Position numbers and translations under genes: made by a program
Origin: Macrostomum hystrix
Taxonomy: Eukaryota > Animalia > Platyhelminthes
Direction of reading: 5' to 3'
Assembly (NCBI GenBank): GCA_950097015.1
Contig: CATNEN010000005.1
Span: 6,057,418-6,121,417 of the forward strand
DNA length: 64,000 nt
The notes under the pieces: model-generated
What the model was told of the DNA's origin: nothing
What the model saw: only the letters and a program-made list of their open reading frames with translations
Database searches by the model: none
Shown here: positions 1 through 24,014 of the stretch, in pieces
Numbering within the stretch: the stretch's first letter is position 1
Layout: each line of letters begins with the position of its first letter

Positions 1-1451
1 GAACTGAGAGGGATGAGAGTGAGGAACTGAGAGGGATGAGAGTGAGGAACTCAGAGGGATGAGAGTGAGGAACTGAGAAGGATGAGAGTGAGGAACTGAG
101 AGGGATGAGAGTGAGGAACAGAGAGGGATGAGAGTGAGGAACTGAGAGGGATGAGAGTGAGCAACTGAGAGGATGAGAGTGAGGAACTGAGAGGGATGAG
201 AGTGAGCAACTGAGAGGGATGAGAGTGAGGAACTGAGAGGGATGAGAGTGAGGAACTGAGAAGGATGAGAGTGAGGAACTGAGAAGGATGAGAGTGAGGA
301 ACTGAGAGGGATGAGAGTGAGGAACTGAGAGGGATGAGAGTGAGGAACTCAGAGGGATGAGAGTGAGGAACTGAGAGGGATGAGAGTGAGGAACTGAGAG
401 GGATGAGAGTGAGGAACTGAGAGGGATGAGAGTGAGGAACTGAGAGGGATGAGAGTGAGGAACTGAGAGGGATGAGAGTGAGGAACTGAGAGGGATGAGA
501 GTGAGGAACTGAGAGGGATGAGAGTGAGGAACTGAGAGGGATGAGAGTGAGGAACTGAGAGGGATGAGAGTGAGGAACTGAGAGGGATGAGAGTGAGGAA
601 CTGAGAAGGATGAGAGTGAGGAACTGAGAGGGATGAGAGTGAGGAACTGAGAGGGATGAGAGTGAGGAACTGAGAGGGATGAGAGTGAGGAACTGAGAGG
701 GATGAGAGTGAGCAACTGAGAGGATGAGAGTGAGGAACTGAGAGGGATGAGAGTGAGGAACTGAGAGGGATGAGAGTGAGGAACTGAGAGGGATGAGAGT
801 GAGGTACACGGAGGGGATGAGAGTGAGGTACACAGAGGGGATGAGAGTGAGGTACACAGAGGGGATGAGAGTGAGGTACACAGAGGGGATGAGAGTGAGG
901 TACACAGAGGGGATGAGAGTGAGGTACACAGAGGGGATGAGAGTGAGGAACTGAGATGGATTAGAGTGAGGAACTGAGAGGGATGAGAGTGAGGAACCGA
1001 GAGGACATTGGAGTGAGGAACAGAGAGGGATGAGAGTGAGGAACTGAGAGGGATGAGAGTGAGGAACTGAGAGGGATGAGAGTGAGGAACTGAGAGGGAT
1101 GAGAGTGAGGAACTGAGAGGGATGAGAGTGAGGTACACGGAGGGGATGAGAGTGAGGTACACAGAGGGGATGAGAGTGAGGTACACAGAGGGGATGAGAG
1201 TGAGGAACTGAGAGTGATGAGAGTGAGGAACTGAGAGGGATGAGAGTGAGGAACTGAGAGGGATGAGAGTGAGGTACACAGAGGGGATGAGAGTGAGGTA
1301 CACAGAGGGGATGAGAGTGAGGTACACAGAGGGGATGAGAGTGAGGTACACAGAGGGGATGAGAGTGAGGAACTGAGATGGATTAGAGTGAGGAACTGAG
1401 AGGGATGAGAGTGAGGAACCGAGAGGACATTGGAGTGAGGAACAGAGAGGG
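1..1451. repeat. Purine-rich 23/24-bp minisatellite (GAACTGAGAGGGATGAGAGTGAG; variant GTACACAGAGGGGATGAGAGTGAG), about 60 copies, truncated by the window start
   Basis: Direct tandem periodicity. A marker block (CTGAGATGGATTAGAGTG...GAACCGAGAGGACATTGGAG) occurs at about 951-1030 and again at 1371-1451. Confidence 0.98.
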
Positions 1452-2135: not shown

Positions 2136-5100
2136 ATGGACACCAATGCTAGCGTCCGTGGACCGGAAGATGCCGGATCAGAGGACCGGGAACTCGAGGA
2201 TGCAGAATCGCCGGTCTCTACGTGGGAAGACAGTGCAGAATCAATGAGTCAGAGAAGTGAGTCGGACTCAACTTTCTCTCTGCTGTGCGAAGAAAACTTC
2301 TTAATGTACCAAGAGCCAGAGTTGCTAGTTTTCTTCTGGGACATCAAGCACGGAGGTGTTGAAAATAGTCTGCGCAATGACCTTCTTCGAGCCATAGACA
2401 GCAGCGACTCTGAGGAGCTGAGCAGAATATCAGACAGAATCAGAAAAGGACTTCAAGACGATGATGATGCAGAAGTGAAAGTGCTGCTGCTTATGTCAGC
2501 CGCCGAGCCAGAGCTGGAACTGCTGCAGTTCTTGACTGAAAGACACGCCGACTCATGCCTGCAGGCGCGGGGTTTATCAGCTAACAACATGCTGCACTTT
2601 GTGTGCGGATGCAACAACTCAGATTCAGCAACTGCAGCCTTGGAGCTGATCTATAACAGAGTGGGCAAACAGCTGGTCAAGGAGGTCAACAACTCAAAGC
2701 AGCTGCCTGTACACATCGCAGCTAAAAACAGCAAGAATCCTGCAGTGTTTCTCTGGCTCATTTCCACCGTCGAGGACAAGAATCTGTTTTTCGTTCAAGA
2801 CGACGACGGCTACAGTGCTGTTAGCCTCGCATTTGAGAAGCAGAATTTGGACACACTCAAACAAGTGACTGAGAAGCTTGGTCTGGCGGAGTGCCTGGCG
2901 GCAAAAACTGCCAAAAATGAAAATATTTGCCTTCTAGCCGCATTCAATACAGCCAATCCTGCAGTGTTTCTCTGGCTCATTTCCACCGTCGAGGATAAAA
3001 ATATGTTTTTCGGTCACGATGATGACGGCTACAGTGCTGTTAGCATCGCATTTGAGAAGCTGAACTTGGACACACTCAAACAAGTGACTGAGAAGCTTGG
3101 TCTGGCGGAGTGCCTGGCGGCAAAAACTGCCAAAAATCAAAATATTTGCCTTCGAGCCGCATTCAATACAGCCAATCCTGCAGTGTTTCTCTGGCTCATT
3201 TCCATCGTCCAGGACAAGAATCTGTTTTTCATTCAAGACGATGACGGCTACAGTGCTGTTAGCATAGCATTTGATCAGCTGAACTTGGACACACTCAAAC
3301 AAGCGACTGAGAAGCTTGGTCTGGCGGAGTGCCTGGCGGCAAAAACTGCCAAAAATGAAAATATTTGCCTTCCAGCCGCAGCGAATTCAGCCAATCCTGC
3401 AGTGTTTCTCTGGCTCATTTCCACCGTCGAGGATAAGAATCAGTTTTTCGTTCAAGACGATGACGGCTACAGTGCTGTTAGCATAGCATTTGATCAGCTG
3501 AACTTGGACACACTCAAACAAGCGACTGAGAAGCTTGGTCTGGCGGAGTGCCTGGCGGCAAAAACTGCCAAAAATCAAAATATTTGCAAAAGAGCCGCAT
3601 TCAATTCAGACAATCCTTCAGTGTTTCTCTGGCTCATTTCCACCGTCGAGGACAAGAATCTGTTTTTCGTTCAAGACGATGACGGCTACAGTGCTGTTAG
3701 CACTGCATTTTTTAAGCAGAATTTGTACACTCTCAAACAAGTGACTGAGAAGCTTGGTCTGGCGGAGTGCCTGGCGGCAAAAACTGCCAAAAATGAAAAT
3801 ATTTGCCTTCGAGCCGCAGCGAATTCAGCCAATCCTGCAGTGTTTCTCTGGCTCATTTCCACCGTCGAGGACAAGAAACTGTTTTTCGTTCAAGACGATG
3901 ACGGCGACAGTGCTGTTAGCATAGCGTTTCTATATCAGAACTTGGAAACTCTCAAACAAGTGACTGAGAAGCTTGGTCTGGCGGAGTGCCTGGCGGCAAA
4001 AACTGCCAAAAATCAAAATATTTGCCTTCCAGCCGCAGCGAATTCAGCCAATCCTGCAGTGTTTCTCTGGCTCATTTCCACCGTCGAGGATAAGAATCAG
4101 TTTTTCGTTCAAGACGATGACGGCTACAGTGCTGTTAGCATAGCATTTGATCAGCTGAACTTGGACACACTCAAACAAGCGACTGAGAAGCTTGGTCTGG
4201 CGGAGTGCCTGGCGGCAAAAACTGCCAAAAATCAAAATATTTGCAAAAGAGCCGCATTCAATTCAGACAATCCTTCAGTGTTTCTCTGGCTCATTTCCAC
4301 CGTCGAGGACAAGAATCTGTTTTTCGTTCAAGACGATGACGGCTACAGTGCTGTTAGCACTGCATTTTTTAAGCAGAATTTGTACACTCTCAAACAAGTG
4401 ACTGAGAAGCTTGGTCTGGCGGAGTGCCTGGCGGCAAAAACTGCCAAAAATGAAAATATTTGCCTTCGAGCCGCAGCGAATTCAGCCAATCCTGCAGTGT
4501 TTCTCTGGCTCATTTCCACCGTCGAGGACAAGAAACTGTTTTTCGTTCAAGACGATGACGGCGACAGTGCTGTTAGCATAGCATTTGATCAGCTGAACTT
4601 GGACACACTCAAACAAGCGACTGAGAAGCTTGGTCTGGCGGAGTGCCTGGCGGCAAAAACTGCCAAAAATGAAAATATTTGCCTTCGAGCCGCATTCAAT
4701 TCAGACAATCCTTCAGTGTTTCTCTGGCTCATTTCCACCGTCGAGGACAAGAATCTGTTTTTCGTTCAAGACGATGACGGCTACAGTGCTGTTAGCACCG
4801 CATTTTATAAGCAGAACTTGGACACACTCAAACAAGCGACTGAGAAGCTTGGTCTGGCGGAGTGCCTGGCGGCAAAAACTGCCAAAAATCAAAATATTTG
4901 CCTTCGAGCCGCAGCGAATTCAGCCAATCCTGCAGTGTTTCTCTGGCTCATTTCCATCGTCGAGGACAACAATCTGTTTTTCGGTCACGATGATGACGGC
5001 TACAGTGCTGTTAGCATAGCGTTTCGATATCAGAACTTGGACACACTCAAACAAGTGACTGAGAAGCTTGGTCTGGCGGAGTGCCTGGCGGCAAAAACTG

Positions 5101-8100
5101 CCAAAAATGAAAATATTTGTCTTGTAGCCGCATTCAATACAGACAATCCTGCAGTGTTTCTCTGGCTCATTTCTATCGTCGAGGACAACAATCTGTTTTT
5201 CGGTCACGATGATGACGGCTACAGTGCTGTTAGCACTGCATTTTTTAAGCAGAACTTGGACACTCTCAAACAAGTGACTGAGAAGCTTGGTCTGGCGGAG
5301 TGCCTGGCGGCAAAAACTGCCAAAAATCAAAATATTTGCCTTCCAGCCGCAGCGAATTCAGCCAATCCTGCAGTGTTTCTCTGGCTCATTTCCACCGTCG
5401 AGGATAAGAATCAGTTTTTCGTTCAAGACGATGACGGCGAAAGTGCTGTTAGCTCGGCATTTTGGGAGCTGACCTTTCTCACACTCAAACAAGTGACTGA
5501 GAAGCTTGGTCTGGCGGAGTGCCTGGCGGCAGAAAATGCCAAAGGTCAATGTAGTTTGCATGCAGCGGCCTGGAACAGAGAGAATCCAGCCTTATTTCGA
5601 TGGCTCATTTCCATCGTCGAGGACAAGAAACTCTTCTTTGCAAAGGCACCAGGTGATTTCGGAAGCAATGCCGTCAGTTATGCCTTTTATCGTCAAGGGT
5701 TGGTCACAGTGAAGCTTTTGACAGACCGTTTTGGACTCAGCGAGTGTTTGAGCTGCATTGACAATCTAAATCGGGATTTGTTTTATCATTCCATTCTGAA
5801 CAGCGCGAACCCGGGAGTATTTCCCTGGCTTCTCGAGCAGGTCTCCCAGCAATGTCCAGACAAGAAGTCCAGAATTTTCGAGTTGGATTCCAACGGCAAC
5901 ACTCTGCTTCATGCACTGTTTAGGAAGGTTGATTTGTTCGGCGATGTTGATGCGCTTGCAGTGCTGATCGGCCGCATAAACTTTCTTTTTGAAAATGAAG
6001 TTGATCCAAGAAAAGAAAACAAATTCAGACTCAACTGTCTGCTTGCCGCTGAATCCAGTGCTGACAATCTCAATCGTCTTTTGCGAGCTCTTCAAAGATC
6101 AGCGCATTTGGATATCTTCAGAAATCTGCAAAGAAACTCGGAGGGCCTTCATGCAGCTCATGTCTTCTGCACTCGCTACGAGCTCCGAGTTATCGAGAAC
6201 GATTTGAGCAAGCTGTGTGGTCTCAGTCCTGACGAGCTCCTTGCAGTCCGAGTTTCTGACGGACCGCTGAAGGATGCAACTTGTCTGCACTTTGCCTGCG
6301 AATCCGGTCACAAGTTGAACATCGAATACCTTCTAAAGAAAGGACGGAAGCTGGAAGATGAGACAGACGCCGGGCAGACGAGTGTCGACTTTGCCTGCAA
6401 CAAGGCGAAGCTCGAGAATGTTTTGGATGTTGCAGAGAAGTCAGTTGGTCTCGGAAAACTGCTCAAGCTGGTTGATCCAACGAAGCGAGCTCTGAACCTT
6501 CCGGACGTTCAGAGCGCCCGAGGTCACCTGACTCGATTCAACGACTCATCGCTGAAGGCCAGCATTGAGGATGATAAATCCAGACGACAGACGAGAGGCA
6601 AGGAAGCCGGTGGGATGAAAAACGAGAGTCTGCAGGCCGGACACGGAGCTGACAGCATTTCAAAGTCCGAGGATTCGCCAGAAGTGAAAATGCTGTTCAG
6701 AGCATTCGAGCTCGACTCAAGTGAGATGCTCCGCAGCTTGATCAGTTTGGGCTTCGCCATCGATGAGATCGATGACCAGTTCTCCAGGCATGTCTTAAAG
6801 CAAATTGGCAATGGGCGGGAAAGCAGTAAGTCTCCTACAATAGCCAAGCTTCAAAAGTACTTCTCCTCAGAAGAAAGAGATTCTGAAGCTCTCATGCTGA
6901 TGGAGTACGCAGTGCTGCTCGAGAAGCCGAAGCTGCTCAATGACCTGATGCTTCTGCCACAGTTTGACATCATCCCACAGACTTTGAGGCTGCTGGTTTA
7001 TCTCAAGCCCAGAGTGAAGTCGAGCAATGTTGAGAATCTGAAAAAAGTGCAAGCTCTAGCCTTGAACATTGTCGTCAATGTTCTGGAGCACCTCTACGTG
7101 AATGCTGATGAAGAAGAGCGGAATCTTGTTTTCGACTACCTGAGTGGCTCATTTATGGTGTCAGACGGGCATCCTCAGGTTCGAGGTCCGAGGTTCCCGC
7201 CACCATTGGATTATCTTACCAGACCAATTTCAAACGATAAAACTGATCACGAAAAAGTGAGCAAAGATGCGAAGACACCAAAAAAGCCATCAGAAAAGAA
7301 GTCTGCAGCTGCAGTGATGTCAGTGATGGATCTGGTGCAGACCCTGGACTGTGACGATGTGTTTGCCACTGACTGCATCAGCCAGTTGGTGGATCAGCAG
7401 TGGAACAAGGCTCCACCGTTGCCCTGGAGCAGTCCTGCACGCTGCTGCTCATGCAACATACCGCAAAAGGTGACAATTAAACAGCGGTTCTTCATCCACT
7501 CTGCTTTTTTCCTGGTCTTTCTGCTCTACTTTGCATGGTACGTGACGGATTTCAGTCGGACAAAGCAGTCTCCGATTCTAGACGTCGTCCTGTTGGCCTA
7601 CGCGCTGTCCTTCACTCTGCAGGAAGTCAACGACTTGCTGAACAAGCTGTCTATGAAGGACATACGAATTTTCAGAATGCACATGAGATGTCCTCGCTAC
7701 TTCACCGACTTCTTCAACTACTTTGACATGCTCGGCCTGCTGCTGATGTGGGCGGGGCTGGTCCTGAAGCTGCTTGGCCGGCTGAGCGACCCCAGCCTCA
7801 TGCGCAGCTCTCAGGTCGTCCTCAGCGTCTCGTTCCTGTTCCTGGGATTCCGCTCCGTGGCCCTGCTCAGCTACTTCAAGGTCACTGGGCCGAACATCAA
7901 TATGCTGAAGAGCTTGCTGTTCAAAGACCTGCTGCCATTCTTGATCATCATGCTGGTTCTGATCTTCTCATTTGGCATTTTCTTCTTCAACCTGCTGTTC
8001 CCGGCCTTCTCAGACCTGACAGACGTCCTGGCTCTCGTGAAGATTTTCACAACGCCCCTGGCGCTGGCCTTAAGCATCTTTGAGCTCTCGCTGTTCGAGT

Positions 8101-8450
8101 CGTGCAACTCCAGCAGTCTCGCGACCGGACAGACCTGTGCGGACAGTGGAGGCAACCAGGTGTACAGCCTATTCCTGATGTTCGTGTACGTCTTGCTGGT
8201 AAACATTGTGATGTTCAACCTGCTGATCGCACTGTTCAACCGCACCGTGACAGCGATGGCCAGCAGGGCGGAGGTTCTGTGGCGCAAGAATCTGTTCGAG
8301 CTGCTGGAGGAGTTCGCAGAGGTCAGTCCGGTTCCGCCGCCGCTGTCGTTCCCGCTCTACGCCTGGAAACTGCTGCGGAGGTGCCGCCCTTCGCACTGCC
8401 GACCCTGCGCTGGCAAAGTCGGTCCTTCTGACGGCTCTGAGAGAAGCAAG
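2136..8450 (+). CDS. Exon 1 (2105 codons) of an ankyrin-repeat-containing TRP cation channel with a TRPM-like membrane core
   Basis: 6.3-kb stop-free ORF. Ankyrin motifs (LPVHIAAKN, GNTLLHALF, ATCLHFACESGH, GQTSVDFAC). Pre-S1 DVFATDCISQLVDQQW, six hydrophobic segments, S6 LLVNIVMFNLLIALFN, TRP-box-like LWRKNLFELLEEF and PVPPPLS. Strong donor AAG|GTAAGA at 8450/8451. Confidence 0.93.
2739..5585 (+). repeat. Coding tandem repeat: 13 x 219 bp (73 aa = two ankyrin repeats), followed by a degenerate 14th unit
   Basis: CCT(G/T)CAGTGTTTCTCTGG recurs at 2739, 2958, 3177 ... 5367 with an exact 219-bp period. A degenerate copy starts at 5586. Confidence 0.98.
7480..8360 (+). other. TRP channel S1-S6, pore and TRP domain coding region
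   Basis: S1 RFFIHSAFFLVFLLYFAWYV, S2-S3 YFTDFFNYFDML, S4-S5 FRSVALLSYFKVTGPNINMLKSLLFKDLLPFL, S6 and TRP helix. The layout matches established TRPM-type motifs (GP..I...M.KD; NLLIAMFN; WKFQR..LI.EY..RP.LPPP). Confidence 0.9.
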
Positions 8451-8855
8451 GTAAGAGGCCTGGTGGACTGAGGGACTGACTCTGTTACTCACAGATGATA
8501 AATGGTCTGAATATATAGCCCTTAGATTCATTCAGACAATGACCGAATCCAATTTTCAATTGCAAGAACTGATTGTGTGTACATGAATGCAAATGGCTTT
8601 GTAGCAAAGACATGCTCAGATTATAGTAAGCTGGGGCTGGTCATGAAACTCTTGAGGACTGATTAACAGTAGAAGCAAGGTGAGAGGCCTGGTGAGCGCA
8701 GGTGAACTGAGGGGCTGACTATGTTTACTCATATAGGCACTAGATTCAGTCAGACGATGACCGAATCCAATTTGAATGGAAATAACTGGTTGTGTGCACA
8801 TGATTGCAAATAAGCTCATGTTTCAAGGCGCTCTTCCTCACGGCTTCCGTTCCAG
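8451..8855 (+). other. Phase-0 GT-AG intron (405 bp) containing a degenerate duplicate of its own 5' end
   Basis: Begins GTAAGA and ends CTCTTCCTCACGGCTTCCGTTCCAG. Splicing preserves the reading frame into a coiled-coil exon. Confidence 0.8.
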
Positions 8856-9140
8856 CCGTGGTGGACGAACCGGAGCGACTTCAGCGGCTACCCCGAAGAC
8901 TTCAAGCGCTTCCTGATCTTCCAGGCCGAGCAGCTCCGGCAGCAGCGGCCACGGCTGCAGCGGGCGGTCGAGCGGCACAAGGGGGACGTCGATGTGCTGA
9001 AGGCGCACGTGGAGAACCAGGTCAAGGACCTGCGGGAGGAACTGCGGAATGAGATGAAAGAAAACTTCGAGAACCTGCAGCAGCAAATGTCGCAGGTGAT
9101 GAGCATTCTGCAGCAACTGCAGCAGCAGCGTCAGCAGTGA
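8856..9140 (+). CDS. Exon 2 (94 aa + stop): C-terminal coiled coil of the TRP channel (PWWTNRSDFSGYPEDFKRFLIFQAEQLR...LREELRNEMKENFENLQQQMSQVMSILQQLQQQRQQ*)
   Basis: 285 nt, open in frame from the acceptor to TGA at 9138-9140. GC3-rich like the membrane-domain codons. Heptad-like E/Q/L pattern expected for a TRPM-type tetramerisation coil. Missing from the ORF track in this frame because it has no leading ATG. Confidence 0.82.
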   Translation, partial: PWWTNRSDFSGYPEDFKRFLIFQAEQLRQQRPRLQRAVERHKGDVDVLKAHVENQVKDLREELRNEMKENFENLQQQMSQVMSILQQLQQQRQQ

Positions 9141-9835: not shown

Positions 9836-10848
9836 AGTCTAGAATCCCCTGTGCAAAGCAGTCTAGAATCCCCTGTACAAAGCAGTCTAGAATCCCCTGT
9901 GCAAAGCAGTCTAGAATCCCTTGTGCAAAGCAGTCTAGAATCCGCTGTGTGAGCAGTCTAGAATCCCTTGTGCAAAGCAGTCTAGAATCCCCTGTGCAAA
10001 GCAGTCTAGAATCCCTTGTGCAAAGCAGTCTAGAATCCCCTGGGTGAGCAGTCTAGAATCCCCTGTGCAAAGCAGTCTAGAATCCGCTGTGTGAACAGTC
10101 TAGAATCCCTTGTGCAAAGCAGTCTAGAATCCCCTGTGCAAAGCAGTCTAGAATCCCTTGTGCAAAGCAGTCTAGAATCCCCTGGGTGAGCAGTCTAGAA
10201 TCCCCTGTGCAAAGCAGTCTAGAATCCCTTGTGCAAAGCAGTCTAGAATCCCTTGTGCAAAGCAGTCTAGAATCCCCTGTGCAAAGCAGTCTAGAATCCC
10301 CTGTGCAAAGCAGTCTAGAATCCCCTGTGCAAAGCAGTCTAGAATCCCTTGTGCAAAGCAGTCTAGAATCCCTTGTGCAAAGCAGTCTAGAATCCCCTGT
10401 GCAAAGCAGTCTAGAATCCCCTGTGCAAAGCAGTCTAGAATCCCCTGTGCAAAGCAGTCTAGAATCCCCTGGGTGAGCAGTCTAGAATCCCCTGTGCAAA
10501 GCAGTCTAGAATCCCTTGTGCAAAGCAGTCTAGAATCCCTTGTGCAAAGCAGTCTAGAATCCGCTGTGTGAGCAGTCTAGAATCCCCTGTGCAAAGCAGT
10601 CTAGAATCCCCTGTGCAAAGCAGTCTAGAATCCCCTGTGCAAAGCAGTCTAGAATCCCCTGGGTGAGCAGTCTAGAATCCCCTGTGCAAAGCAGTCTAGA
10701 ATCCCTTGTGCAAAGCAGTCTAGAATCCCCTGTGCAAAGCAGTCTAGAATCCCCTGTGCAAAGCAGTCTAGAATCCCCTGTGCAAAGCAGTCTAGAATCC
10801 CCTGTCCAAAGCAGTCTAGAATCCCCTGTGGAAAGCAGTCCAGAATCC
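9836..10848. repeat. 24-bp minisatellite AGTCTAGAATCCCCTGTGCAAAGC (with 23-bp variants), about 42 copies
   Basis: Direct tandem periodicity. An XbaI site (TCTAGA) is present in almost every unit. Confidence 0.98.
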
Positions 10849-11060
10849 ATAAATTCAGTTTTTAGAAATTTATTAAGTATTTTTCGCTTTTAAAATTTTC
10901 AAATAGTCAAAAACAAGCACTTTCCTTTAGATACAGACCTTTGACTTGGTTTTGTTTTTTTTAATTTATTTCGGTTGTTATTTTCTTAACTGCTCCTATT
11001 GTGCACACCTTTTTAAGAACTAACAAGATTACATGCTTATCGTTTAATCTATCTTTACTT

Positions 11061-11829
11061 ACATGTTTATCTTGTGTTTACAGACCCAGCTCACATGTTT
11101 ATCTTGTGTTTACAGACCTAGCTCACATGTTTATCTTGTGTTTACAGCCCTAGCTCACATTTTTATCTTGTGTTTACAGCCCAGCTCACATGTTTATCTT
11201 GTGTTTACAGCCCTAGCTCACATGTTTATCTTGTGTTTCCAGCCCCAGCTCACATGTTTATCTTGTGTTTACAGCCCTAGCTCACATGTTTATCTTGTGT
11301 TTACAGCCCTAGCTCACATGTTTATCTTGTGTTTACAGCCCTAGCTCACATGTTTATCTTGTGTTTACAGCCCTAGCTCACATGGTTATCTTGTGTTTAC
11401 AGCCCTAGCTCACATGTTTATCTTGTGTTTACAGCCCCAGCTCACATGTTTATCTTGTGTTTACAGCCCTAGCTCACATGTTTATCTTGTGTTTACAGCC
11501 CTAGCTCACATGTTTATCTTGTGTTTACAGCCCTAGCTCACATGTTTATCTTGTGTTTACAGCCCTAGCTCACATGTTTATCTTGTGTTTACAGCTCTAG
11601 CTCACATGTTTATCTTGTGTTTACAGCCCCAGCTCACATGTTTATCTTGTGTTTACAGCCCTAGCTCACTTGTTTATCTTGTGTTTAAAGCCCTAGCTCA
11701 CTTGTTTATCTTGTGCTTACAGCCCTAGCTCACATGTTTATCTTGTGTTTACAGCCCTAGCTCACATGTTTATCTTGTGTTTACAGCCCCAGCTCACATG
11801 GTTATCTTGTGTTTACGGCCCTAGCTCAC
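11061..11829. repeat. 32-bp minisatellite ACATGTTTATCTTGTGTTTACAGCCCTAGCTC, about 24 copies
   Basis: Direct tandem periodicity. Confidence 0.98.
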
Positions 11830-12229
11830 TCATTTCTAACACTAAATTGTTTTACAACAGTGTTCGGGTGTCTAATGGCATGAATGCTGCTTCACAATGG
11901 TCGAGTGTACAGTTTTCGAGTTGTATTTGAGCAGTTTTAGTCATGAATTGATCAAAATATTCAAAATTATCTTGACTGAATCTGATCTGACACATGAGTG
12001 AAGCAGCAGCTGTCATCCAATGAACCGAGTCCTGTTTCAAATCCCATGACTATTTTCTCCCGAGAAATGAATTATCCCAGACTAAAAGCTGATTGACAGG
12101 AGCAATCGATGTTTATCCCAGCCATTTGCTCAAAATCAAAATAAATTATTTTGTTATAAAAGTCTCAGACTCGAACTCTGAGAACTATTGACACCTTCTG
12201 ATTAGAAACCTAATGTCTCTGGCTTGCCT

Positions 12230-12692
12230 GATGATTCACTCACTCAGTTGGCACAATGTCACAGGTGTGGCTCTTGGACTTGGCTGATGATTCACTCACT
12301 CAGTTGGCACAATGTCACAGGTGTGGCTCTTGGACTTGGCTGATGATTCACTCACTCAGTTGGCACAATGTCACAGGTGTGGCTCTTGGACTTGGCTGAT
12401 GATTCACTCACTCAGTTGGCACAATGTCACAGGTGTGGCTCTTGGACTTGCCTGATGATTCACTCACTCAGTTGGCACAATGTCACAGGTGTGGCTCTTG
12501 GACTTGGCTGATGATTCACTCACTCAGTTGGCACAATGTCACAGGTGTGGCTCTTGGACTTGGCTGATGATTCACTCACTCAGTTGGCACAATGTCACAG
12601 GTGTGGCTCTTGGACTTGGCTGATGATTCACTCACTCAGTTGGCACAATGTCACAGGTGTGGCTCTTGGACTTGGCTGATGATTCACTCACT
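12230..12692. repeat. 56-bp minisatellite GATGATTCACTCACTCAGTTGGCACAATGTCACAGGTGTGGCTCTTGGACTTGGCT, 8 full copies plus a partial
   Basis: Units start at 12230, 12286, 12342 ... 12678 and are almost invariant. Confidence 0.98.
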
Positions 12693-12710
12693 AAGTGTTT
12701 GAGGTCTTGT

Positions 12711-13021
12711 GCTGGAGTCGCAGCAGGATGTTAGCTGGAATCGCAGCAGGATGTTAGCTGGAATCGCAGCAGAATGTTAGCTGGAATCGCAGCAGGATCG
12801 AAGCTGGAATCGCAGCAGGATCGAAGCTGGAATCGCAACAGGATCGAAGCTGGAATCGCAGCAGGATCGAAGCTGGAATCGCAGCATGATCGAAGCTGGA
12901 ATTGCAGCAGGATTGTTCCTGGAATCGCAGCGGGGTTGTACCTGGAATCGCAGCAGCATTGTAGCTGAAATCGCAGCAGCATTGTAGCTGGAATCGCATC
13001 AGGATGGGAGCTGGAATCGCA
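12711..13021. repeat. 23-bp minisatellite GCTGGAATCGCAGCAGGAT(GTTA/CGAA), about 13 copies
   Basis: Direct tandem periodicity with variants clustered along the array. Confidence 0.95.
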
Positions 13022-15169
13022 TTACAAAAACTAATTTTGTCACAGAGGTCCTGAGTGAAACAGCGATGAAGCTTCGAAGTTCAAGCTGGTTGCAAAATAT
13101 TTCATTTATTCTACTCGGAGTAGTTTCGTAAGCCGAGTTACTTGAGCTTTTGAGCTAAACAAGAGGTCTGAAGTTCGAATCCAAAGCTTTTACCACAATC
13201 CTTCACATCTTGTTCTCTTTACTACTTCTAGTATTTCTGAGAGAGTAAAGCCCTGTTCATTGCCAATTGCGTGTGTGGTGACAGTGGATCCTTGGGTCAG
13301 TCAAAAGCTAGAGAATGAGTGTGAGAGATACAATTCAGACTACTGACAACAATAGAAAAGCAAGGACTTGGCTGCAAAACTCTCACATAACACTAAAAAA
13401 TATCGCCATAGAAAATGACAAGCTTAAAAGAGACTTCTGTGCACACTGAGAGTGGTGGGAGAGGACTGCGTGTGGCTATGGCTGACTGACGAAGGCAAAC
13501 AAGCCAGAAACCGGTCTCGGTCTGCCAGCGCGAGGTTCGTTCCCCACTTTTAGTGTGTTACAGGCCGAATGCTAGCCGAAAGCGGTATCTACATTTCGAA
13601 GCGATGCCACCGCAATGCCGAATTGCAAGCCTGTATGCATTGGCACTGGATGCTGACCAAATAAGAACACAATGAAAGGACAGAACAGAATAAAACAGGA
13701 GGCACTTATCATTGAGCAGACATCAGACAAAAACGAGCCCGAGAATAAACTGCTCAATAGTAAATTTATTAGCAGCAGAGCTCGAAATTATTTTATTTAC
13801 AAATGACTAATTAGTCGATAACAATAGCGAGTATTCTAAGATTTTGAAAAATAAACTAGCTATATGTTTAACTGCGAAGCATAAGGAAATTATAGAAAAC
13901 AGAGTGAATAACATTTGCCTAATAAAAATATTAATCGACAAGTTTGAGGAATCGCCATGCACCTTTGGGAGGGCAACTGCTTTTCCATCTGGTATACCAG
14001 AGACGATTTGGCGGCAAGTAGTGTAAGTGCCTTATGTCTAGCTGGCGCGACTCACACGGATATTCATGAAGGTTGCAACGAAGAATATTAATTGTTCGTT
14101 ATACCGCCATGACAATCAACAGAATTTACCCCTTCACGGCCTTCAGTTGCACCAATATAATGCGACTCAGGACGGTAATGACTTCTGAATCCTGTAGAAA
14201 ACCGGCAAATCTTAGTGATAATCCCCTCCACTGGAACATGTTTCCACTTGACACTCCTGCAGTAGGTTCAGACAACACCAGGATTTTCTTCAGCCAAAGC
14301 TAATTGCAAAATTACTGCAGTGACAGGTTTACTGTCTTATTTAGCAGTAATTGCCAGCCGAAATGACTGACTAGCAAGACCGCCAATTCCATGATGTATA
14401 AACTAGTTCATTAATAGAAAACTGGCTGAACTTTGACTTTTTGTCTTCAGGAAAGTAGAGTAGAGCACACTGCCTATTTTCAAATGCTAACTTCGAAAAG
14501 GATTGTAGAACAAGTAGCTGAAATGAATAAAATATAAATGAGTGATAGCATACAGATAATTTGTTAGCTAAGCAATTGTTTTACCTAGCAAAAGTGGCTC
14601 TAATGCTATAGTAGAATGCCTGCCGTAACGGCCACCGTAACGCTGCAACGGATAGAAGAGACGCTGATTGCGGGCCGACTACGCAATGGCTACAGAATAG
14701 AATAGAATGCGACATTATCAGTCGAGCCGCCTGCTATCCGCTTACTCATTTCCCATTGGGCAGCCGTTGATTAGCGCTAAATGCCCATTTGCACAGCAAA
14801 AACAAAATTAAAAAGCTCGTATCTCGTGTCAGTACGCAACGATTATTGCAAAAATGTTTATACAAAGATAAATCAGTTCATTTGGAAGGGCCGAGCATAT
14901 TTAATCTACAGAAAAGCAAAACAGTTGCTGCTTCCGAGCCTAGCTCTCGCAGCTGTCTTTGTACCTCACTATACGAGTATGCCAACTGCAACAATAAGCC
15001 ACAATGAGCATAAGACTCAGAGACTAAAACTGTTTGCAGCCATAAAAATGGAGGCTGTCGAGGCTTTGAAATCTTTCGCCCAAGAAAAACTTTAGTCATA
15101 AAGGAAAGCCGAATCGAGCACAGACTCTTAATTGAGGCTCGAGTAGTGCTCTAGCTGCTCAGCCGTGTT

Positions 15170-15741
15170 CTCGAACTCAACTCGGGGTTTGGTGGGTCCT
15201 TTGTGTAGCCGCACAGATTCTCTCTTGTGTTGAGGCACAATTTGAGTACAGGACTCATTCTTTTAAATGCTGAGCAGCCAAGAATGTATTTTACCTGTCA
15301 TTGAAACTGATGCAAATGGAGGCTGCGAATGGGGGATGGTCATTTTGTCTCCTACTCAAACTCAACTCAACTAGTAAGTCTACTCAGTGCAGCCATGCAG
15401 AAATATTTCTATATGAGCTCAGAAAGCATTGCGATAGAGGAGCCCTAAAAACTGATGCACACAGTCGCAATGCAGTGTGGCCTGCGATGCCCATCCTTCT
15501 GTTGCTAGGCAACAATAAACAAACTGGCGCCAATTTAAGAGCCGGAGTGGAGCATCGTCTTCGCTCTTCATTTGCGACGGCAGCTTTCAAGCAGCCGACT
15601 GACCGACATCCACCGACCGAGTCTCTCCGTTTCTAGGCGACTCTCTCCGTTGCTAGGCGACTCTCTCCGTTGCTAGGCGACTCTCTCCGTTGCTAGGCGA
15701 GACTCTCCGGATCTCCCATTGCTGCTGGAGTGCAGGTGAGG
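15170..15741 (+). promoter_or_regulatory. Non-coding module copy 1: X-box GTTGCTAGGCAAC (15501-15513), forkhead-type AATAAACAAA (15514-15523), 20-bp X-box repeats (15621-15710), splice donor CAG|GTGAG (15736)
   Basis: Blocks homologous to 18140-18700. Perfect 13-bp X-box. Function is inferred. Confidence 0.6.
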
Positions 15742-15882
15742 GGGTTAATTGCTGAACTAGTTTCCATAAACTACAAAACAGTGCTTTACTCTCTTAATGC
15801 TGTTATTTCTAAACAACAGTAGGTATATTAGTCGTTTGTTAAACTATGCTTTAGATGGATTTCAGAAATACAATCCTGACAG

Positions 15883-17872
15883 ATAAAATGAGAGACACAA
15901 TGATATGAAATGAGAGACACAATGACATGACATGAGAGACACAATGACATGAAATGAGAGACACAATGACATGAAATGAGAGACACAATGACATGAAATG
16001 AAAGACACAATGACATGAAATGAGAGACACAATGCCATGAAATGAGAGACACAATGACATGAAATGAGAGACACAATGACATGAAATGAGAGACACAATG
16101 ACATGAAATGAGAGACACAATGACATGAAATGAGAGACACAATGACATGAAATGAGAGACACAATGACATGAAATGAGAGACACAATGATATGAAATGAG
16201 AGACACAATGACATGAAATGAGAGACACAATGATATGAAATGAGAGACACAATGACATGAAATGAGAGACACAATGACATGAAATGAGAGACACAATGAC
16301 ATGAAATGAGAGACACAATGACATGAAATGAGACACACAATGACATGAAATGAGAGACACAATGACATGAAATGAGAGACACAATGACATGAAATGAGAC
16401 ACACAATGACATGAAATGAGAGACACAATGACATGAAATGAGAGACACAATGACATGAAATGAGAGACACAATGACATGAAATGAGAGACACAATGACAT
16501 GAAATGAGAGACACAATGATATGAAATGAGAGACACAATGACATGAAATGAGAGACAGAATGATATGATATGAGAGACACAATGATATGAAATGAGAGAC
16601 ACAATGACATGAAATGAGAGACACAATGACATGAAATGAGAGACACAATGACATGAAATGAGAGACACAATGACATGAAATGAGAGACACAATGACATGA
16701 AATGAGAGACACAATGACATGAAATGAGAGACACAATGACATGAAATGAGAGACACAATGACATGAAATGAGAGACACAATGACATGAAATGAGAGACAC
16801 AATGACATGAAATGAGAGACAGAATGATATGAAATGAGAGACAGAATGATATGAAATGAGAGACACAATGACATGAAATGAGAGACACAATGACATGAAA
16901 TGAGAGACACAATGACATGATATGAGAGACACAATGACATGAAATGAGAGACACAATGACATGAAATGAGAGACACAATGACATGAAATGAGAGACACAA
17001 TGACATGAAATGAGAGACACAATGACATGAAATGAGAGACACAATGACATGAAATGAGAGACACAATGACATGAAATGAGAGACAGAATGAAATGATATG
17101 AGAGACACAATGATATGAAATGAGAGACACAATGACATGAAATGAGAGACACAATGACATGAAATGAGAGACACAATGACATGAAATGAGAGACACAATG
17201 ATATGAAATGAGAGACACAATGACATGAAATGAGAGACACAATGATATGAAATGAGAGACACAATGACATGAAATGAGAGACACAATGACATGAAATGAG
17301 AGACACAATGACATGAAATGAGAGACACAATGACATGAAATGAGACACACAATGACATGAAATGAGAGACACAATGACATGAAATGAGACACACAATGAC
17401 ATGAAATGAGAGACAGAATGATATGATATGAGAGACACAATGATATGAAATGAGAGACACAATGACATGAAATGAGAGACACAATGACATGAAATGAGAG
17501 ACACAATGACATGAAATGAGAGACACAATAACATGAAATGAGAGACAGAATGATATGATATGAGAGACACAATGATATGAAATGAGAGACACAATGACAT
17601 GAAATGAGAGACACAATGACATGAAATGAGAGACACAATGACATTAAATGAGAGACACAATGACATGAAATGAGAGACACAATGACATGAAATGAGAGAC
17701 ACAATGACATGAAATGAGAGACACAATGACATGAAATGAGAGACACAATGACATGAAATGAGAGACACAATGACATGAAATGAGAGACACAATGACATGA
17801 AATGAGAGACAGAATGATATGAAATGAGAGACAGAATGATATGAAATGAGAGACACAATGACATGAAATGAG
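15883..17872. repeat. 22-bp minisatellite ATGAAATGAGAGACACAATGAC, about 90 copies
   Basis: Direct tandem periodicity. Explains the 586-694 aa minus-strand pseudo-ORFs in all three frames. Confidence 0.99.
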
Positions 17873-18139
17873 GCCCAATTTAGTCTCCAAAGTTGGCACC
17901 TGAGCTAATTTTCCAATATTTCTTCGCGAATACATTAAAAGTCCATCTTCAAGACCTCACAGAAAGTCTAATCTTAGTATTTTAGAAAATTATTCTTCAA
18001 GCAATGGCCCTCTCACCCAAATACACCCAAAGCAATTCGCACAGAACAATGGACAGCAACAATGAACCCACAGCCGAAACTGTTTTGCAGCAATAAAATA
18101 TTCAATGGCGAGTTTGAGCAGGCTAACTCATGCTTTGTC

Positions 18140-18698
18140 TTCGTCTCAAACTCAACTCGAGTCTTCTCTGTGCAGATTGAAGCAAGCCCCTCAACCTGTG
18201 TGCTCAAAGTGAGCAGTGTTTAATCTCTCATGTGGCATTGAAACTGTAGCGAATGGAAGCTGAGAATGGGTTGGACAAAGTACTTTTGTCACCGACTCAA
18301 ACCCAACTCAAATGCTTTAGTAGGCCATGCAGACCTGTCTCCGTATGGACTCAGTGTTCATGTACTTTAATCAGCTCATAGGATGTTTGAGTAGCACAAA
18401 CTGGAGCACACAGTCGCAATGCAGTGTAGAATGTATGCTCAGCCCATGCTTCTGTTGCTAGGCAACAAATAAACAAATTCGCACCGATTCAAAGTTACTG
18501 TCGAGTATCCGTTTTCTCTTCATTCACAGCCAACTGAATCATTTTTTAAACTGCTGAAGCCTCTGAGTCTGTCTGTTGCTAGGCGAGTCTCTCCGTTGCT
18601 AGGTGAGTCTGTCCGTTGCTAGGCGAGTCTCTCCGTTGCTAGGTGAGTCTCTCCAGATCGCCCATTGCTGGCAGTGTCCAGAGGACTCAAAGGTAAAG
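18140..18698 (+). promoter_or_regulatory. Non-coding module copy 2: X-box (18454-18466), AAATAAACAAA (18467-18477), acceptor-like TTTTCTCTTCATTCACAG, 20-bp X-box-like repeats (about 18566-18655), donor AAG|GTAAAG (18693)
   Basis: Shares with copy 1 the blocks CATTGAAACTG, CACACAGTCGCAATGCAGTGT, CTTCTGTTGCTAGGCAAC, AATAAACAAA, CTCTTCATT and CCATTGCTG. Confidence 0.6.
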
Positions 18699-19317
18699 TA
18701 AATTTAACTTTTTAGTTCAACAGCTTCCGACTTTTGTACGCACATCCAAGATCTTTAATCATAGTTTAAAGTCTGCATACTTTAAGTTACTTGTAGCGTC
18801 TTTTCCATTTGCAATAGCTACTTCACCAACTGTTACAGTATTTAGGACAAAATATGTATTTATATGGGCTGGCCTGGCGGTGCAATCAGAGTGGAAAAAG
18901 TTGTCTTTTACAATTCCGTTTTCTGGAAGCTATTTGCTACTTTCTACTGTAAGTAGTGCTGATTAGGCATACCTTTTTAGACTACTATATCTTAGGCTAT
19001 TATATTATTATAATAGGCTATCTTAGGATAAAACGCACTGTTATTTCCGATACTCACTACTGTAAACAGTGTGCAACAACAACTAACCATGAAGATTGCG
19101 GTGAAAAAGAGATATAAGTGGAAAAATATTTAAAAGAAAAGAAAAAATAGGACAAAATTGCGAGTGTAAATGAATGCTAAAGAGAAGGGAAGAGAGAGGA
19201 GGAGAGAAGAAGAAGGAGTATCGAATAGTCAAGCATCATATTATATTTCATTTCTAGGCTGATAGAAGATAGGAGCTAACGGAGATAGATGGGTAGGAGA
19301 CAGAAGAAATTGTTTCA

Positions 19318-19620
19318 ATCCGGATCATTTATCAATGGGAATAATTCCTCAATAGGGATAATTTGTCAGAGGAAAGTTTGATAAAATATGATCATTTGTC
19401 AGTGGGAAATCTAACGTCATGGGACAATTTTATCGCGGGAAAAATAGAAAATTGTGTCAATTTTGTCAAAATTGTGGCAAAACGAGAAAGTGAAATTTAT
19501 TCTACATTGATAATTTTACAATTTTACGTGCAATAATTTGACAAAGAAATATCTTAGTCGAAGAAGATAATTTGCCCAGTAAGGATAATTTAAACCAAGG
19601 GCTTTAGACAAATGGGACAC
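19318..19620. repeat. Highly degenerate GGGATAATTT-motif cluster
   Basis: Scattered GGATCATTT, GGGATAATTT, GGGACAATTT and GGATAATTT motifs related to the 22208-23062 array. Confidence 0.4.
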
Positions 19621-19800
19621 TTTCTCAAATGAGGATATATCGATTAAGGGACCTTTTGCCACGGAAAACAGATAAGTATGTACAAAGAGACAGAGAATGT
19701 AAAATCAGGAACGATATACCACATTTAAATTTGACACACCAATTTTAAACTATTTGACTGGGCGAATAAATTAATGAAAGAAGTAAAACCCAGCTGTTTT

Positions 19801-21413: not shown

Positions 21414-21525
21414 AATTTGCTTGCAGCATTGCTGCAGTATGAAGGGATTATTTGAGGCAAAAAGAGAGAAAGAATATGTTGGCGTTTAATTAGACTATTT
21501 TTTAACATCATATTTTCTTATTCAG

Positions 21526-21693
21526 TTTCGGCAGCCTTCTAACTGCTCTCGCACTGACAGCCTCTGAGTCTCAGCGTTGCTAGGCGAGTCTCCCCCCGTT
21601 GCCCGGCGAGTGTCTCCGTTGCTAGGCGAGTCTCAGCAAGTCGCTCACCGCTGCTGTTGCAGCTGCGGCTGCATCGCGGACTCATCGGTGAGT
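21526..21693 (+). promoter_or_regulatory. Non-coding module copy 3 (5'-truncated): GTTGCTAGGCGAG repeats and donor TCG|GTGAGT (21688)
   Basis: CAGCCTCTGAGTCT...CGTTGCTAGGCGAGTCT...GGACTCA is homologous to 18555-18692. Preceded by an acceptor-like TTTTCTTATTCAG. Stop codons in all three + frames. Confidence 0.5.
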
Positions 21694-22207
21694 GTTGTTG
21701 GCATTGTAGTTTGCAATTGACTGGAAAAGTACAATTTGCATACTGGCGTTTGCTGACTCTGACCATAGACACCAATAGGAAATAAAGTGCGAATTTACTG
21801 ATTGGACGGGTTTGAAGCTTTTTGCTGAAATGGTAGATTTACGCACTAGGAAGCCTAGCATAAGTGCATTGATTTATGACCAAGTGTGTGTGCGCAAGAC
21901 CAGCTCCTTCGGCCCATAGACAATACCCGTCTGGGATTTACTGCATAGTAGCTCAGAAGAGGGATGGCACGGAGATCAAGTGGGGCATCATTTACCGCAC
22001 AGTTGCGGAATTTACTGCACACTTCAATCTATTTCTTTGATGGCCTTTGGGCCATAAACTATACACGAGCTTGAGACGTTTACGCACACTTGGTTACATG
22101 TCAATGGGCTGGTGGAATTTCGCTGGCGAGCTTTGTTTACAGTTTAGGCGGAAATTCTTCGTTTGGTTGTACAGTTGCCGACTGGGGCGAATATTTTGAG
22201 AACTGAA

Positions 22208-23968: not shown

Positions 23969-24014
23969 TTGCCTATGGGTTGATAAGAGCAACATTTTTT
24001 CTGTTTCAGAAAAA

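What the first reader, a model, noticed from the sequence alone, without database searches (positions are those of the whole stretch)
2136..9140. Chimeric TRP architecture: about 30 or more ankyrin repeats on a TRPM-like channel core
Seen: the membrane and TRP-domain motifs (TGPNINMLKSLLFKD; NLLIALFNRT...LWRKNLFELLEEF...PVPPPLS; C-terminal coil) resemble TRPM more than TRPA, TRPC or TRPN. The N-terminus is 26 repeat-array ankyrins plus several divergent ones, with no recognisable SLOG/MHR1-3 region. Known: TRPM channels lack ankyrins, while long ankyrin arrays are typical of TRPA1 and TRPN/NOMPC (29 repeats, mechanical gating spring). Inference: a domain-swapped or lineage-specific TRP subfamily. 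A NOMPC-like tether/spring role is the alternative to a binding role.
Basis: partly seen in the sequence, partly recalled or inferred. Interest (0 to 1): 0.78.

Follow-up and report, generated by a model that had tools for sequence, protein, structure and literature searches.

The report
Flatworm TRPM-like channel with giant ankyrin array
This is an intact flatworm ion-channel gene that joins about 35 ankyrin repeats to a TRPM-type pore; the odd layout is real, but it is already published for flatworms as the TRPM_MCLZ family, so this is an extreme long-array relative and not a new kind of channel.

Summary
A two-exon gene (2136-8450 and 8856-9140) encodes about 2199 aa. It has no SLOG/MHR1-2 domain. 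It carries 29 array-type ankyrin repeats, 26 of them in thirteen near-identical 73-aa double units, plus flanking repeats. These are followed by a helical linker, S1-S6, a TRP helix and a C-terminal amphipathic helix.

The repeats are true ankyrins. An AF2 model (pLDDT 97) matches only ANK proteins. The units also align without gaps to Macrostomum lignano units that score Pfam Ank_2 at E 5e-72.

The membrane core is TRPM-type:
- The 55 best PDB sequence matches and the top 50 Foldseek matches are all TRPM.
- The clade's profile scores TRPM-like proteins at 103-124 bits and TRPN at 39 bits.

Schistosome TRPM_MCLZ, the meclonazepam target, has ankyrin repeats in place of SLOG (PMC10788528, PMC11731825, PMC12861061). 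In a TRPN-rooted tree the window's Macrostomum-specific clade joins the TRPM_MCLZ-type clade (95/88), sister to the SLOG-bearing TRPMs. An AU test does not exclude a deeper position (p 0.21).

This scan has noted the same family at least eight times elsewhere in this genome. What is new here is the array length and its homogenisation.

The parts
2136..8450 (+). Exon 1, 2105 codons, from ATG to the GTAAGA donor at 8451
   Evidence: Open frame. There is an in-frame stop 6 codons upstream of the ATG. The donor was read. The start MDT... is shared with P0005.
2136..2378 (+). Acidic, Ser/Glu/Asp-rich N-terminal tail (aa 1-81), not conserved
   Evidence: Direct reading. Homology to P0002 starts at aa 82.
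2379..2708 (+). N-flank helical, ANK-like repeats (aa 82-191), about 2-3 repeats, not individually verified
   Evidence: 39% identity to P0002 residues 42-160 (E 8e-32). Repeat-like motifs (MLHFVC, PVHIAA) by reading.
2709..5849 (+). 29 array-type ankyrin repeats (aa 192-1238), alternating 37-aa A-type and 36-aa B-type
   Evidence: Local HMMs give 15 A-type and 14 B-type repeats, E 1e-24 to 3.5e-6. The AF2 model of 4 units has pLDDT 97 and pTM 0.91. The Foldseek top 50 are all ANK proteins, best Espin1-AR at TM 0.76 and rmsd 3.3.
2736..5582 (+). Homogenised core of the array: thirteen 219-nt (73-aa) double-ANK units. Units 4 and 7 are identical, as are units 5 and 8.
   Evidence: TRF; unit table; DNA identity matrix of 81-100%.
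5850..6452 (+). C-flank divergent ANKs (aa 1239-1439), about 4-5 repeats; the only Pfam-scoring ANK lies at aa 1379-1427 (6270-6416)
   Evidence: Pfam Ank_2 E 2.4e-15, Ank_4 and Ank. The region is conserved in all paralogues.
6453..7307 (+). Helical linker domain (aa 1440-1724), in the position of TRPM MHR3/4, the TRPC LHD and the NOMPC linker
   Evidence: The AF2 model is helical. VIA alignments run from model residue about 19 into TRPM2 409.., TRPC 156.. and NOMPC 1086... hhalign to the clade-B linker gives prob 96, E 1.4e-9; the direct comparison to TRPM MHR3/4 is not significant. No PF25508 hit.
7308..8390 (+). Pre-S1, S1-S6, pore helix and TRP helix. S1 7476-7547, S2 7572-7643, S3 7710-7784, S4 7794-7868, S5 7887-7997, pore helix 8016-8069, filter LSIFE 8070-8084, S6 plus TRP helix 8157-8318, PPP motif 8328-8348.
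   Evidence: Pfam Ion_trans at aa 1806-2045. PDB phmmer: the 55 best matches are all TRPM, best E 2e-15. Helix positions come from the model.
8451..8855 (+). Intron, 405 nt, GT...AG, phase 0
   Evidence: The junction ...SK|PWW... is the same as in P0002 and P0005.
8856..9140 (+). Exon 2, 94 codons plus TGA: conserved PWW..FSGYP..FKRFL segment and a roughly 45-residue amphipathic helix with 3-4-4 hydrophobic spacing (putative coiled coil)
   Evidence: 67% identity to the P0002 tail, E 5e-42. The spacing was read from the sequence; a single-register heptad count is weak. No Pfam coil or TRPM_tetra hit.

Best explanation
The gene encodes a subunit of an ankyrin-bearing, TRPM-like cation channel. 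This is the flatworm family whose published member is TRPM_MCLZ.

Shown:
- It belongs to a strongly diverged clade seen so far almost only in Macrostomum.
- In that clade the N-terminus is built from 73-aa double-ankyrin units whose number changes quickly between paralogues.
- In this copy unequal crossing-over has produced 29 array repeats, about 35 ANKs in all.

Inferred:
- Four subunits form a TRP-type pore, as in all TRPs.
- The S1-S4 bundle keeps a TRPM/TRPC-type cation-site pattern (E in S2, then D; N and D in S3). It keeps a ligand pocket like the one that binds meclonazepam in TRPM_MCLZ.
- The TRP helix couples this bundle to the gate.
- The C-terminal helix helps assembly.
- The ANK solenoid hangs into the cytoplasm. 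It most likely acts as a partner-docking or tethering scaffold (about 55%). A NOMPC-like gating spring is less likely (about 25%).
For: Architecture and ANK identity.

TRPM-type core:
- The 55 best PDB sequence matches are all TRPM.
- The Foldseek top 50 are all TRPM, E 2e-10.
- In the exhaustive HMMER search the first hits outside the family are ANK-bearing flatworm proteins, followed by SLOG TRPMs such as lamprey TRPM2.
- The Atlas's nearest cluster is TRPM4-like, score 0.97.

Link to TRPM_MCLZ:
- The P0057 clade holds Schistosoma proteins of 1380 aa and Echinococcus and Fasciola proteins named 'TRPM7'. The published TRPM_MCLZ is 1,380 aa, was formerly called TRPM7-like, and has ANK instead of SLOG.
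- Unrooted careful tree: clades A+B against SLOG TRPMs, support 100/95.
- TRPN-rooted tree: A+B 95/88 and TRPN 100/100.
- Clade A's profile scores B at 124 bits, C at 107 and TRPN at 39.
- The clade-A linker is homologous to the clade-B linker (E 1.4e-9). The clade-B linker is homologous to TRPM MHR3/4 (E 4.6e-20).

Labile array:
- Paralogues hold from 4-5 up to 12-13 73-aa units.
- Identity within the array (0.84) exceeds identity between genes (at most 0.75).
- Identical 3-unit block copies are present.
- Variable residues fall on ANK positions x5, x13 and x14 of the B-type repeat.
Against: - The AU test does not reject a tree with the root on clade A's stem (delta lnL 3.66, p 0.21). Clade A may therefore be sister to B+C and not to B.
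- Clade A's stem is very long (2.34 changes per site).
- TRPN was the only outgroup obtained; there were no TRPC, TRPA, TRPV or labelled TRPS references.
- The window protein's filter reads LSIFE where its paralogues have FG-x-(F/V)-E and TRPMs have FG(Q/E). Its conductance could therefore be altered or lost.
- pN/pS across units is about 0.94 overall. The excess at 'variable' codons is post hoc.
- The coiled coil is not confirmed by any model or profile.
Confidence: 0.8

Rival explanations
1. Clade A is a separate, deeper TRPM-related lineage and not the sister of the TRPM_MCLZ-type clade. Its ankyrins would then be an ancestral group-1 TRP trait kept from before the TRPM/TRPS ancestor gained SLOG, or a second independent ANK-for-SLOG swap.
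For: The AU test cannot reject the root on clade A's stem (p 0.21). Clade B's monophyly is weak once TRPN is added (89/47). Clade A's linker shows no direct similarity to TRPM MHR3/4. Himmel 2020 infers that ANK was lost before the TRPM-TRPS split, so a retained-ANK lineage would have to be deep.
Against: The best tree joins A+B at 95/88 and 100/95 unrooted. Clade A's linker matches clade B's (E 1.4e-9). Clade A is seen only in Macrostomum plus one mis-binned metagenome contig, which suits a recent fast-evolving offshoot better than a pre-bilaterian relic. The long stem invites long-branch attraction to the outgroup.
Confidence: 0.15
2. The channel core derives from TRPN/NOMPC or TRPA1, the families that normally carry long ankyrin arrays, and only resembles TRPM superficially.
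For: The array has 29 or more ANKs, as in NOMPC. VIA-align gives NOMPC Z 15.5, not far below TRPM2 at 18.2.
Against: The TRPN profile scores clade A at 39 bits, against 129-137 bits for the TRPM-type profiles. TRPN is a 100/100 clade apart. No TRPN or TRPA appears among the 55 best PDB sequence matches, and the best 150 exhaustive hits that were examined were all ANK-bearing flatworm proteins, SLOG-type TRPMs or fragments. TRPA1 scores Z of at most 11.6. The ANK units are a family-specific 73-aa double repeat shared with short-array paralogues.
Confidence: 0.02
3. The locus is a decaying or non-conducting copy, or the array length is inflated by mis-assembly of a 2.8-kb tandem repeat that lies between satellite arrays.
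For: Gly is replaced by Ser in the selectivity filter. Two pairs of units are 100% identical. The gene sits between a 1.4-kb and a 40-kb satellite array. There are no read data.
Against: A 2105-codon frame runs uninterrupted through the repeat. Splice sites are canonical and exon 2 is conserved. Non-variable codons have pN/pS 0.65. M. lignano paralogues with 11-12 units exist.
Confidence: 0.1

Closest known systems
TRPM_MCLZ (Schistosoma mansoni Smp_333650) and its parasitic-flatworm orthologues, called 'TRPM-like' by Rohr et al. 2026
   Same: Both have N-terminal ankyrin repeats where TRPMs have SLOG/MHR1-2, and a TRPM-type S1-S6 and TRP helix. Both are few-exon genes (3 exons against 2 here). 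Both are flatworm-restricted so far. They are sister clades in the best tree.
   Different: TRPM_MCLZ is about 1380 aa with a handful of ANKs, and clade B as a whole keeps a Pfam-detectable MHR4 half (PF25508 in several of its M. lignano members). The window protein is about 2199 aa with about 35 ANKs in a homogenised 73-aa-unit array, has no detectable PF25508, and has an altered TRP box (WRKNLF against WLA[DE]RY / WQFERY) and an altered filter. TM identity is low: the clade-A profile scores clade B at only about 124 bits. Drug sensitivity is unknown.
Canonical TRPM channels (TRPM2, TRPM3, TRPM4, TRPM8)
   Same: They are the best sequence and fold matches for the linker plus TM plus TRP region. 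Both share the S2/S3 acidic/Asn pattern, the NLLIA S6 motif, the PPP motif after the TRP helix and a C-terminal helix.
   Different: There is no SLOG/MHR1-2. The MHR3/4 sequence signal is lost. A long ANK array is present. The TRP box is not WKFQRY.
TRPN / NOMPC
   Same: Both have a very long N-terminal ankyrin solenoid (29 repeats in NOMPC, 29 array repeats plus flanks here) joined through a helical linker to a TRP pore. The array model matches the NOMPC ANKs.
   Different: The TM domain is far from TRPN (39 bits; separate 100/100 clade). The repeat number is not conserved among paralogues, whereas NOMPC's repeat count is taken here (from memory, not checked) to be conserved. The repeats are 36-37 aa double units.
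Uncharacterised Macrostomum lignano paralogues (P0002, P0005, P0007, P0008 and others)
   Same: They share the same clade, the same 73-aa unit, the same linker, TM region and tail, and 64-65% identity over the C-terminal 632 aa.
   Different: They come from another species and are unnamed hypothetical proteins. Their arrays hold from 4-5 up to 12 units and are less homogenised. They keep the filter glycine.

Membership tests
Canonical TRPM | N-terminal SLOG / MHR1-2 (Pfam LSDAT_euk) | tested here: not met
   No Pfam hit at E<=1. An iterated local SLOG profile hits 46 TRPMs but no clade A or clade B protein. The N-terminus is occupied by ANKs.
Canonical TRPM | MHR3/4 (Pfam PF25508, TRPM2-like domain) before pre-S1 | tested here: inconclusive
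   No PF25508 hit in the window protein. hhalign of clade A against TRPM MHR3/4 is not significant, though A against B (E 1.4e-9) and B against TRPM (E 4.6e-20) link them transitively. The fold aligns to TRPM MHR3/4 but equally to the TRPC and NOMPC linkers.
Canonical TRPM | S1-TRP region closest to TRPM among TRP families | tested here: met
   Only TRPN was available as a labelled non-TRPM sequence reference.
Canonical TRPM | TRP box WKFQRY followed by a proline-rich motif | tested here: inconclusive
   The window has LWRKNLFELLEEF followed by PVPPPLS. The W and the PPP are kept; the KFQRY core is not.
ANK-bearing TRPM-like (TRPM_MCLZ-type) | Ankyrin repeats in place of SLOG on a TRPM-type core | tested here: met
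   The family description comes from PMC11731825 and PMC12861061.
ANK-bearing TRPM-like (TRPM_MCLZ-type) | TM domain forms a clade with TRPM_MCLZ orthologues, apart from SLOG TRPMs | tested here: inconclusive
   The best trees say yes (100/95 unrooted; 95/88 TRPN-rooted). The AU test does not reject clade A branching outside B+C (p 0.21). The orthologues were identified by species, length and source name, not by accession.
ANK-bearing TRPM-like (TRPM_MCLZ-type) | Activation by meclonazepam through the S1-S4 pocket | not testable with these tools
   Needs expression and a Ca2+ or patch assay. The published pocket residues were not mapped here.
TRPN / NOMPC | About 29 ankyrin repeats | tested here: met
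   29 array-type repeats plus flanks.
TRPN / NOMPC | TM domain orthologous to TRPN | tested here: not met
   TRPN forms a 100/100 clade apart. The TRPN profile scores the window at 39 bits, against 140 bits for the TRPM-type profiles.
TRPA1 | TM domain and fold closest to TRPA1 | tested here: not met
   VIA Z 10.3-11.6, against 18.2 for TRPM2. TRPA1 is absent from the PDB sequence hits shown. No TRPA sequence was available for the tree.

The most novel reading that the evidence does not exclude
The long-array members of this Macrostomum clade could be a convergent, TRPM-derived counterpart of NOMPC. In that reading the ~35-repeat ankyrin solenoid works as a tether or gating spring, its length tuned by unequal crossing-over. 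Alternatively it could be a rapidly diversifying recognition surface that gates the pore. Either would make a free-living flatworm a natural experiment on how ANK array length sets channel gating.
Probability: 0.12. Interest if true: 0.75.

Novelty: new variant of a known kind. Interest (0 to 1): 0.36.

Why it matters
TRPM_MCLZ-type channels are validated anthelmintic drug targets, yet their origin and their free-living relatives are barely described. This gene shows three things. The ANK-for-SLOG family is present in the free-living flatworm Macrostomum as well as in the parasitic trematodes and cestodes. It has radiated massively in Macrostomum. It can carry NOMPC-sized arrays made of a homogenised 73-aa double repeat. 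That bears on the published inference that ankyrins were lost before the TRPM-TRPS split. It also gives a tractable model organism for asking what the ANK domain of these channels does. It is not a new TRP superfamily architecture.

Tried and rejected
- Pfam on the whole protein did not call the array as ANK. It gave spurious repeat-driven hits instead (DUF1292, DUF7574, P11_C). These were rejected in favour of structure and homology.
- A direct hhalign of clade A's linker against TRPM MHR3/4 was not significant.
- VIA-align could not separate TRPM from TRPC or NOMPC (Z 18.2, 17.2 and 15.5), so fold similarity alone was not used to assign the family.
The TM part was searched alone instead.
- The look-up of encoding contigs could not give a taxon for P0049 (a Logan run) or P0048.
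Neither expression nor array length could be checked.
- TRPC, TRPA, TRPV and labelled TRPS reference sequences could not be obtained by reference. Only TRPN came in, through an ANK-word search.
- A single-register heptad count on exon 2 was weak.
- The spliced protein was never joined.
Full report
**Gene model**

The window holds one very long open frame, 2136-8471 (2111 aa). An in-frame stop lies six codons upstream of the ATG.

A canonical GTAAGA donor follows 8450, and a pyrimidine-rich CAG acceptor precedes 8856. Exon 2 (8856-9140, 94 codons plus TGA) is 67% identical to the C-terminal tail of Macrostomum lignano P0002 (E 5e-42). P0002 and P0005 read ...SK|PWW... across the same junction.

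The best relatives are unnamed M. lignano proteins, at 64-65% identity over the C-terminal 632 aa. The source is therefore a macrostomid flatworm other than the sequenced M. lignano. The start (MDT...) and aa 82-200 are conserved with these paralogues.

**Are the repeats ankyrins?**

TRF finds a 219-nt unit x12.8 with 91% matches at 2736-5543. The protein has thirteen near-identical 73-aa units and then two diverged ones. Pfam scores ANK only at aa 1379-1427; on the array it returns only spurious repeat-driven hits. Three results settle it:

- The units align without gaps to the 73-aa units of P0002, P0007, P0005 and P0004. P0002 scores Pfam Ank_2 in 14 stretches at E 5e-72. Where the window has NICLRAAFN and YSAVSIAF, the M. 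lignano units have RTILHAAAEN and ESAVHVAF.
- An AF2 model of four units has pLDDT 97.1 and pTM 0.91.
- The top 50 Foldseek matches to that model are all ankyrin-repeat proteins. They include Espin1-AR (TM 0.76, rmsd 3.3 Å over 287 columns), Drosophila TRPA1, NOMPC, ankyrin-1 and ankyrin-B, and DARPins.

Each unit is thus two ANKs of 37 and 36 aa. HMMs built from the two half-units count 29 array-type repeats at aa 192-1238. With about 2-3 N-flank repeats and about 4-5 C-flank repeats the total is about 35. Of the flanks, only the repeat at 1379-1427 is verified.

**No SLOG**

Pfam finds no LSDAT domain. An iterated local SLOG profile recovers 46 TRPMs among the fetched proteins but nothing in the window's clade. 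The N-terminus has no room for such a domain.

**What is the core?**

- phmmer of aa 1381-2111 against PDB sequences gives 55 TRPM chains as the best 55 matches, E 2e-15 and weaker.
- An AF2 model of aa 1440-2105 (pLDDT 63) has only TRPM structures in its Foldseek top 50, E 2e-10 over 620-680 columns.
- VIA-align across 48,161 representative chains ranks TRPM2 at Z 18.2 and TRPM4 at 17.6. TRPC1/5 (17.2) and NOMPC (15.5) are close behind, and TRPA1 scores 11.6 or less. The fold says 'group-1 TRP with a helical linker' and cannot by itself pick TRPM.
- The Atlas language-model search puts a TRPM4-like cluster first, at 0.97.

**Relatives**

An exhaustive HMMER search of 1.84 billion representatives, using a profile of aa 1440-2105 plus six paralogues (A1), found 1652 hits.

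- The first 44 or so cover the whole profile. All that could be named are M. lignano, except one 5-kb contig binned as a Kangiellaceae MAG.
- The next tier matches only the pre-S1 to TRP part. These proteins have Pfam ANK plus Ion_trans and no SLOG, and several carry the C-terminal half of PF25508 (TRPM2-like domain, that is MHR4). They come from M. lignano, Schistocephalus, Dicrocoelium and Opisthorchis.
- Only after these come the SLOG-bearing TRPMs, such as lamprey TRPM2.

**Literature**

The schistosome meclonazepam target TRPM_MCLZ (Smp_333650) is 1,380 aa and has three exons. It is described as having multiple ankyrin-like repeats and lacking MHR1/2-SLOG (PMC10788528, PMC11731825). Rohr et al. 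[quoted passage not shown]

A word search from Dicrocoelium P0057 returns Schistosoma proteins of 1375-1382 aa and Echinococcus and Fasciola proteins named 'TRPM7'. TRPM_MCLZ was previously classified as TRPM7-like. The second tier therefore contains the TRPM_MCLZ orthologues. This identification rests on species, length and source name, not on accession.

Himmel et al. [quoted passage not shown] The flatworm family is an exception to this that is already in print.

**Phylogeny of the pre-S1 to TRP-box region**

- A quick tree of 121 rows (shown) and a careful IQ-TREE (LG+C20 PMSF) of 75 rows give three blocks. These are the window clade A (100/100), the TRPM_MCLZ-type clade B (98/88), and everything that bears SLOG plus a metagenomic clade E. 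A+B lies on one side of a 100/95 branch.
- A last word search with the canonical ANKs of P0010 brought in TRPN1/NOMPC proteins. Rooted on these nine, the careful tree gives TRPN at 100/100, (A+B) at 95/88 and (C+E) at 95/84.
- The caveat is real. Clade A's stem is 2.34 changes per site, and an AU test does not reject the tree with A next to the outgroup (delta lnL 3.66, p 0.21). In other words, A could be sister to B+C.
- This does not make A a TRPN. A's profile scores B at 124 bits, C at 107, E at 103 and TRPN at 39. The TRPN profile scores the window at 39 bits, against 140-141 bits for the B and C profiles.
- The linker supports A+B. hhalign of A against B gives prob 96 and E 1.4e-9. B against TRPM MHR3/4 gives prob 99 and E 4.6e-20. 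A against TRPM directly is not significant.

**Discrete characters**

- S2 reads LQEVND where TRPMs have EE-x-RQ, and S3 reads FFNYFD where TRPMs have D-x-WN-x-x-D. The Glu, Asn and Asp that coordinate Ca2+ in TRPM, TRPC and TRPA structures are kept, and the Gln is an Asp. That these residues form the Ca2+ site is established knowledge and was not tested here.
- S6 reads NLLIALFN.
- The TRP box reads LWRKNLF where TRPMs have WKFQRY and clade B has WQFERY or WLA[DE]RY.
- A PPP motif follows the TRP helix.
- The filter reads LSIFE. Every other clade-A protein examined has FG-x-(F/V)-E, and TRPMs have FG(Q/E). The loss of the filter glycine in this copy is unexplained.

**The array is evolutionarily labile**

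- Paralogues carry from 4-5 up to 12-13 of the 73-aa units.
- Units within the window array are more alike (mean 0.84) than any unit is to a unit of another gene (maximum 0.75).
- Units 4 and 7 are identical at the DNA level, and so are units 5 and 8, which marks a recent three-unit block duplication.
- Variation concentrates at unit positions 26, 34 and 35. These are ANK positions x5, x13 and x14 of the B-type repeat, the positions randomised in DARPins. It also falls at 66, 67 and 70 in the A-type helix 1.
- pN/pS is 0.94 overall. It is 1.4 at the variable codons and 0.65 elsewhere, but those codons were chosen after seeing the data, so this is a lead and not a test.
- A labile length and a variable concave face fit a docking scaffold somewhat better than a length-tuned spring. 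Neither reading was tested.

**Verdict**

The claim of a new chimeric architecture is not supported, because the ANK-for-SLOG layout is the published TRPM_MCLZ / 'TRPM-like' flatworm family. This scan has already noted it at least eight times elsewhere in the same genome. I reached the TRPM_MCLZ link from the literature before seeing those notes.

What is particular to this locus is its clade: Macrostomum-specific, very diverged, with the MHR4 signal lost. The other particular feature is the homogenised array of 29 repeats.

Noticed in passing
window 1-1451 and 24017-63999: The gene lies between arrays of one satellite family: a 23-bp unit x62 upstream and a 24-bp unit (AACTGAGAGGGGATCAGGGAGAGG) x1693 that fills the last 40 kb. 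The arrays are strongly purine-skewed (GC skew about 0.7).
   Followed up: partly
window 9836-23969: A run of unrelated minisatellites lies downstream of the gene: 24 bp x42, 32 bp x24, 56 bp x8.5, 23 bp x13.5, 22 bp x90, 28 bp x58 and 20 bp x43. The long ORFs listed there (for example 15828-17935 on the minus strand) are repeat artefacts.
   Followed up: no
window 8070-8084 (aa 1979-1983): The selectivity-filter position reads LSIFE. All examined paralogues have FG-x-(F/V)-E and TRPMs have FG(Q/E). The conserved filter glycine is a serine in this copy only.
   Followed up: partly
window 3393-4706 (units 4-9): Units 4 and 7 are 100% identical in DNA, and so are units 5 and 8. This is a recent 657-nt three-unit block duplication inside the array. 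Variable residues sit at ANK positions x5, x13 and x14, the topic of notes s1-332670 and s1-332674.
   Followed up: partly
P0024 / P0201: A clade-A channel of 1537 aa sits on a 5.1-kb contig deposited as a 'Kangiellaceae bacterium' MAG. It is almost certainly eukaryotic (flatworm-like) DNA mis-binned into a bacterial genome.
   Followed up: no
P0076, P0097, P0099, P0107, P0114, P0124, P0130, P0144: A well-supported clade (100/99) of metagenome-only proteins has a TRPM-type TM region and an MHR4 half. Its 720-890-aa N-terminus has neither SLOG nor ANK by Pfam. This may be another N-terminal replacement in the TRPM lineage, from an unknown organism.
   Followed up: no
P0262, P0281, P0288, P0291, P0295, P0325, P0329: Proteins named 'serine/threonine-protein phosphatase 6 regulatory ankyrin repeat subunit A/B-like' by their source carry Ion_trans. 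Those included in the tree (P0262, P0288, P0295, P0329) group 100/100 with TRPN1/NOMPC, so these look like mis-named NOMPC orthologues.
   Followed up: partly
P0229: A Paragonimus westermani 'Cu+-exporting ATPase' model shares 87% identity with a short piece of the TRPM_MCLZ-type channel. It is probably a fused gene model.
   Followed up: no
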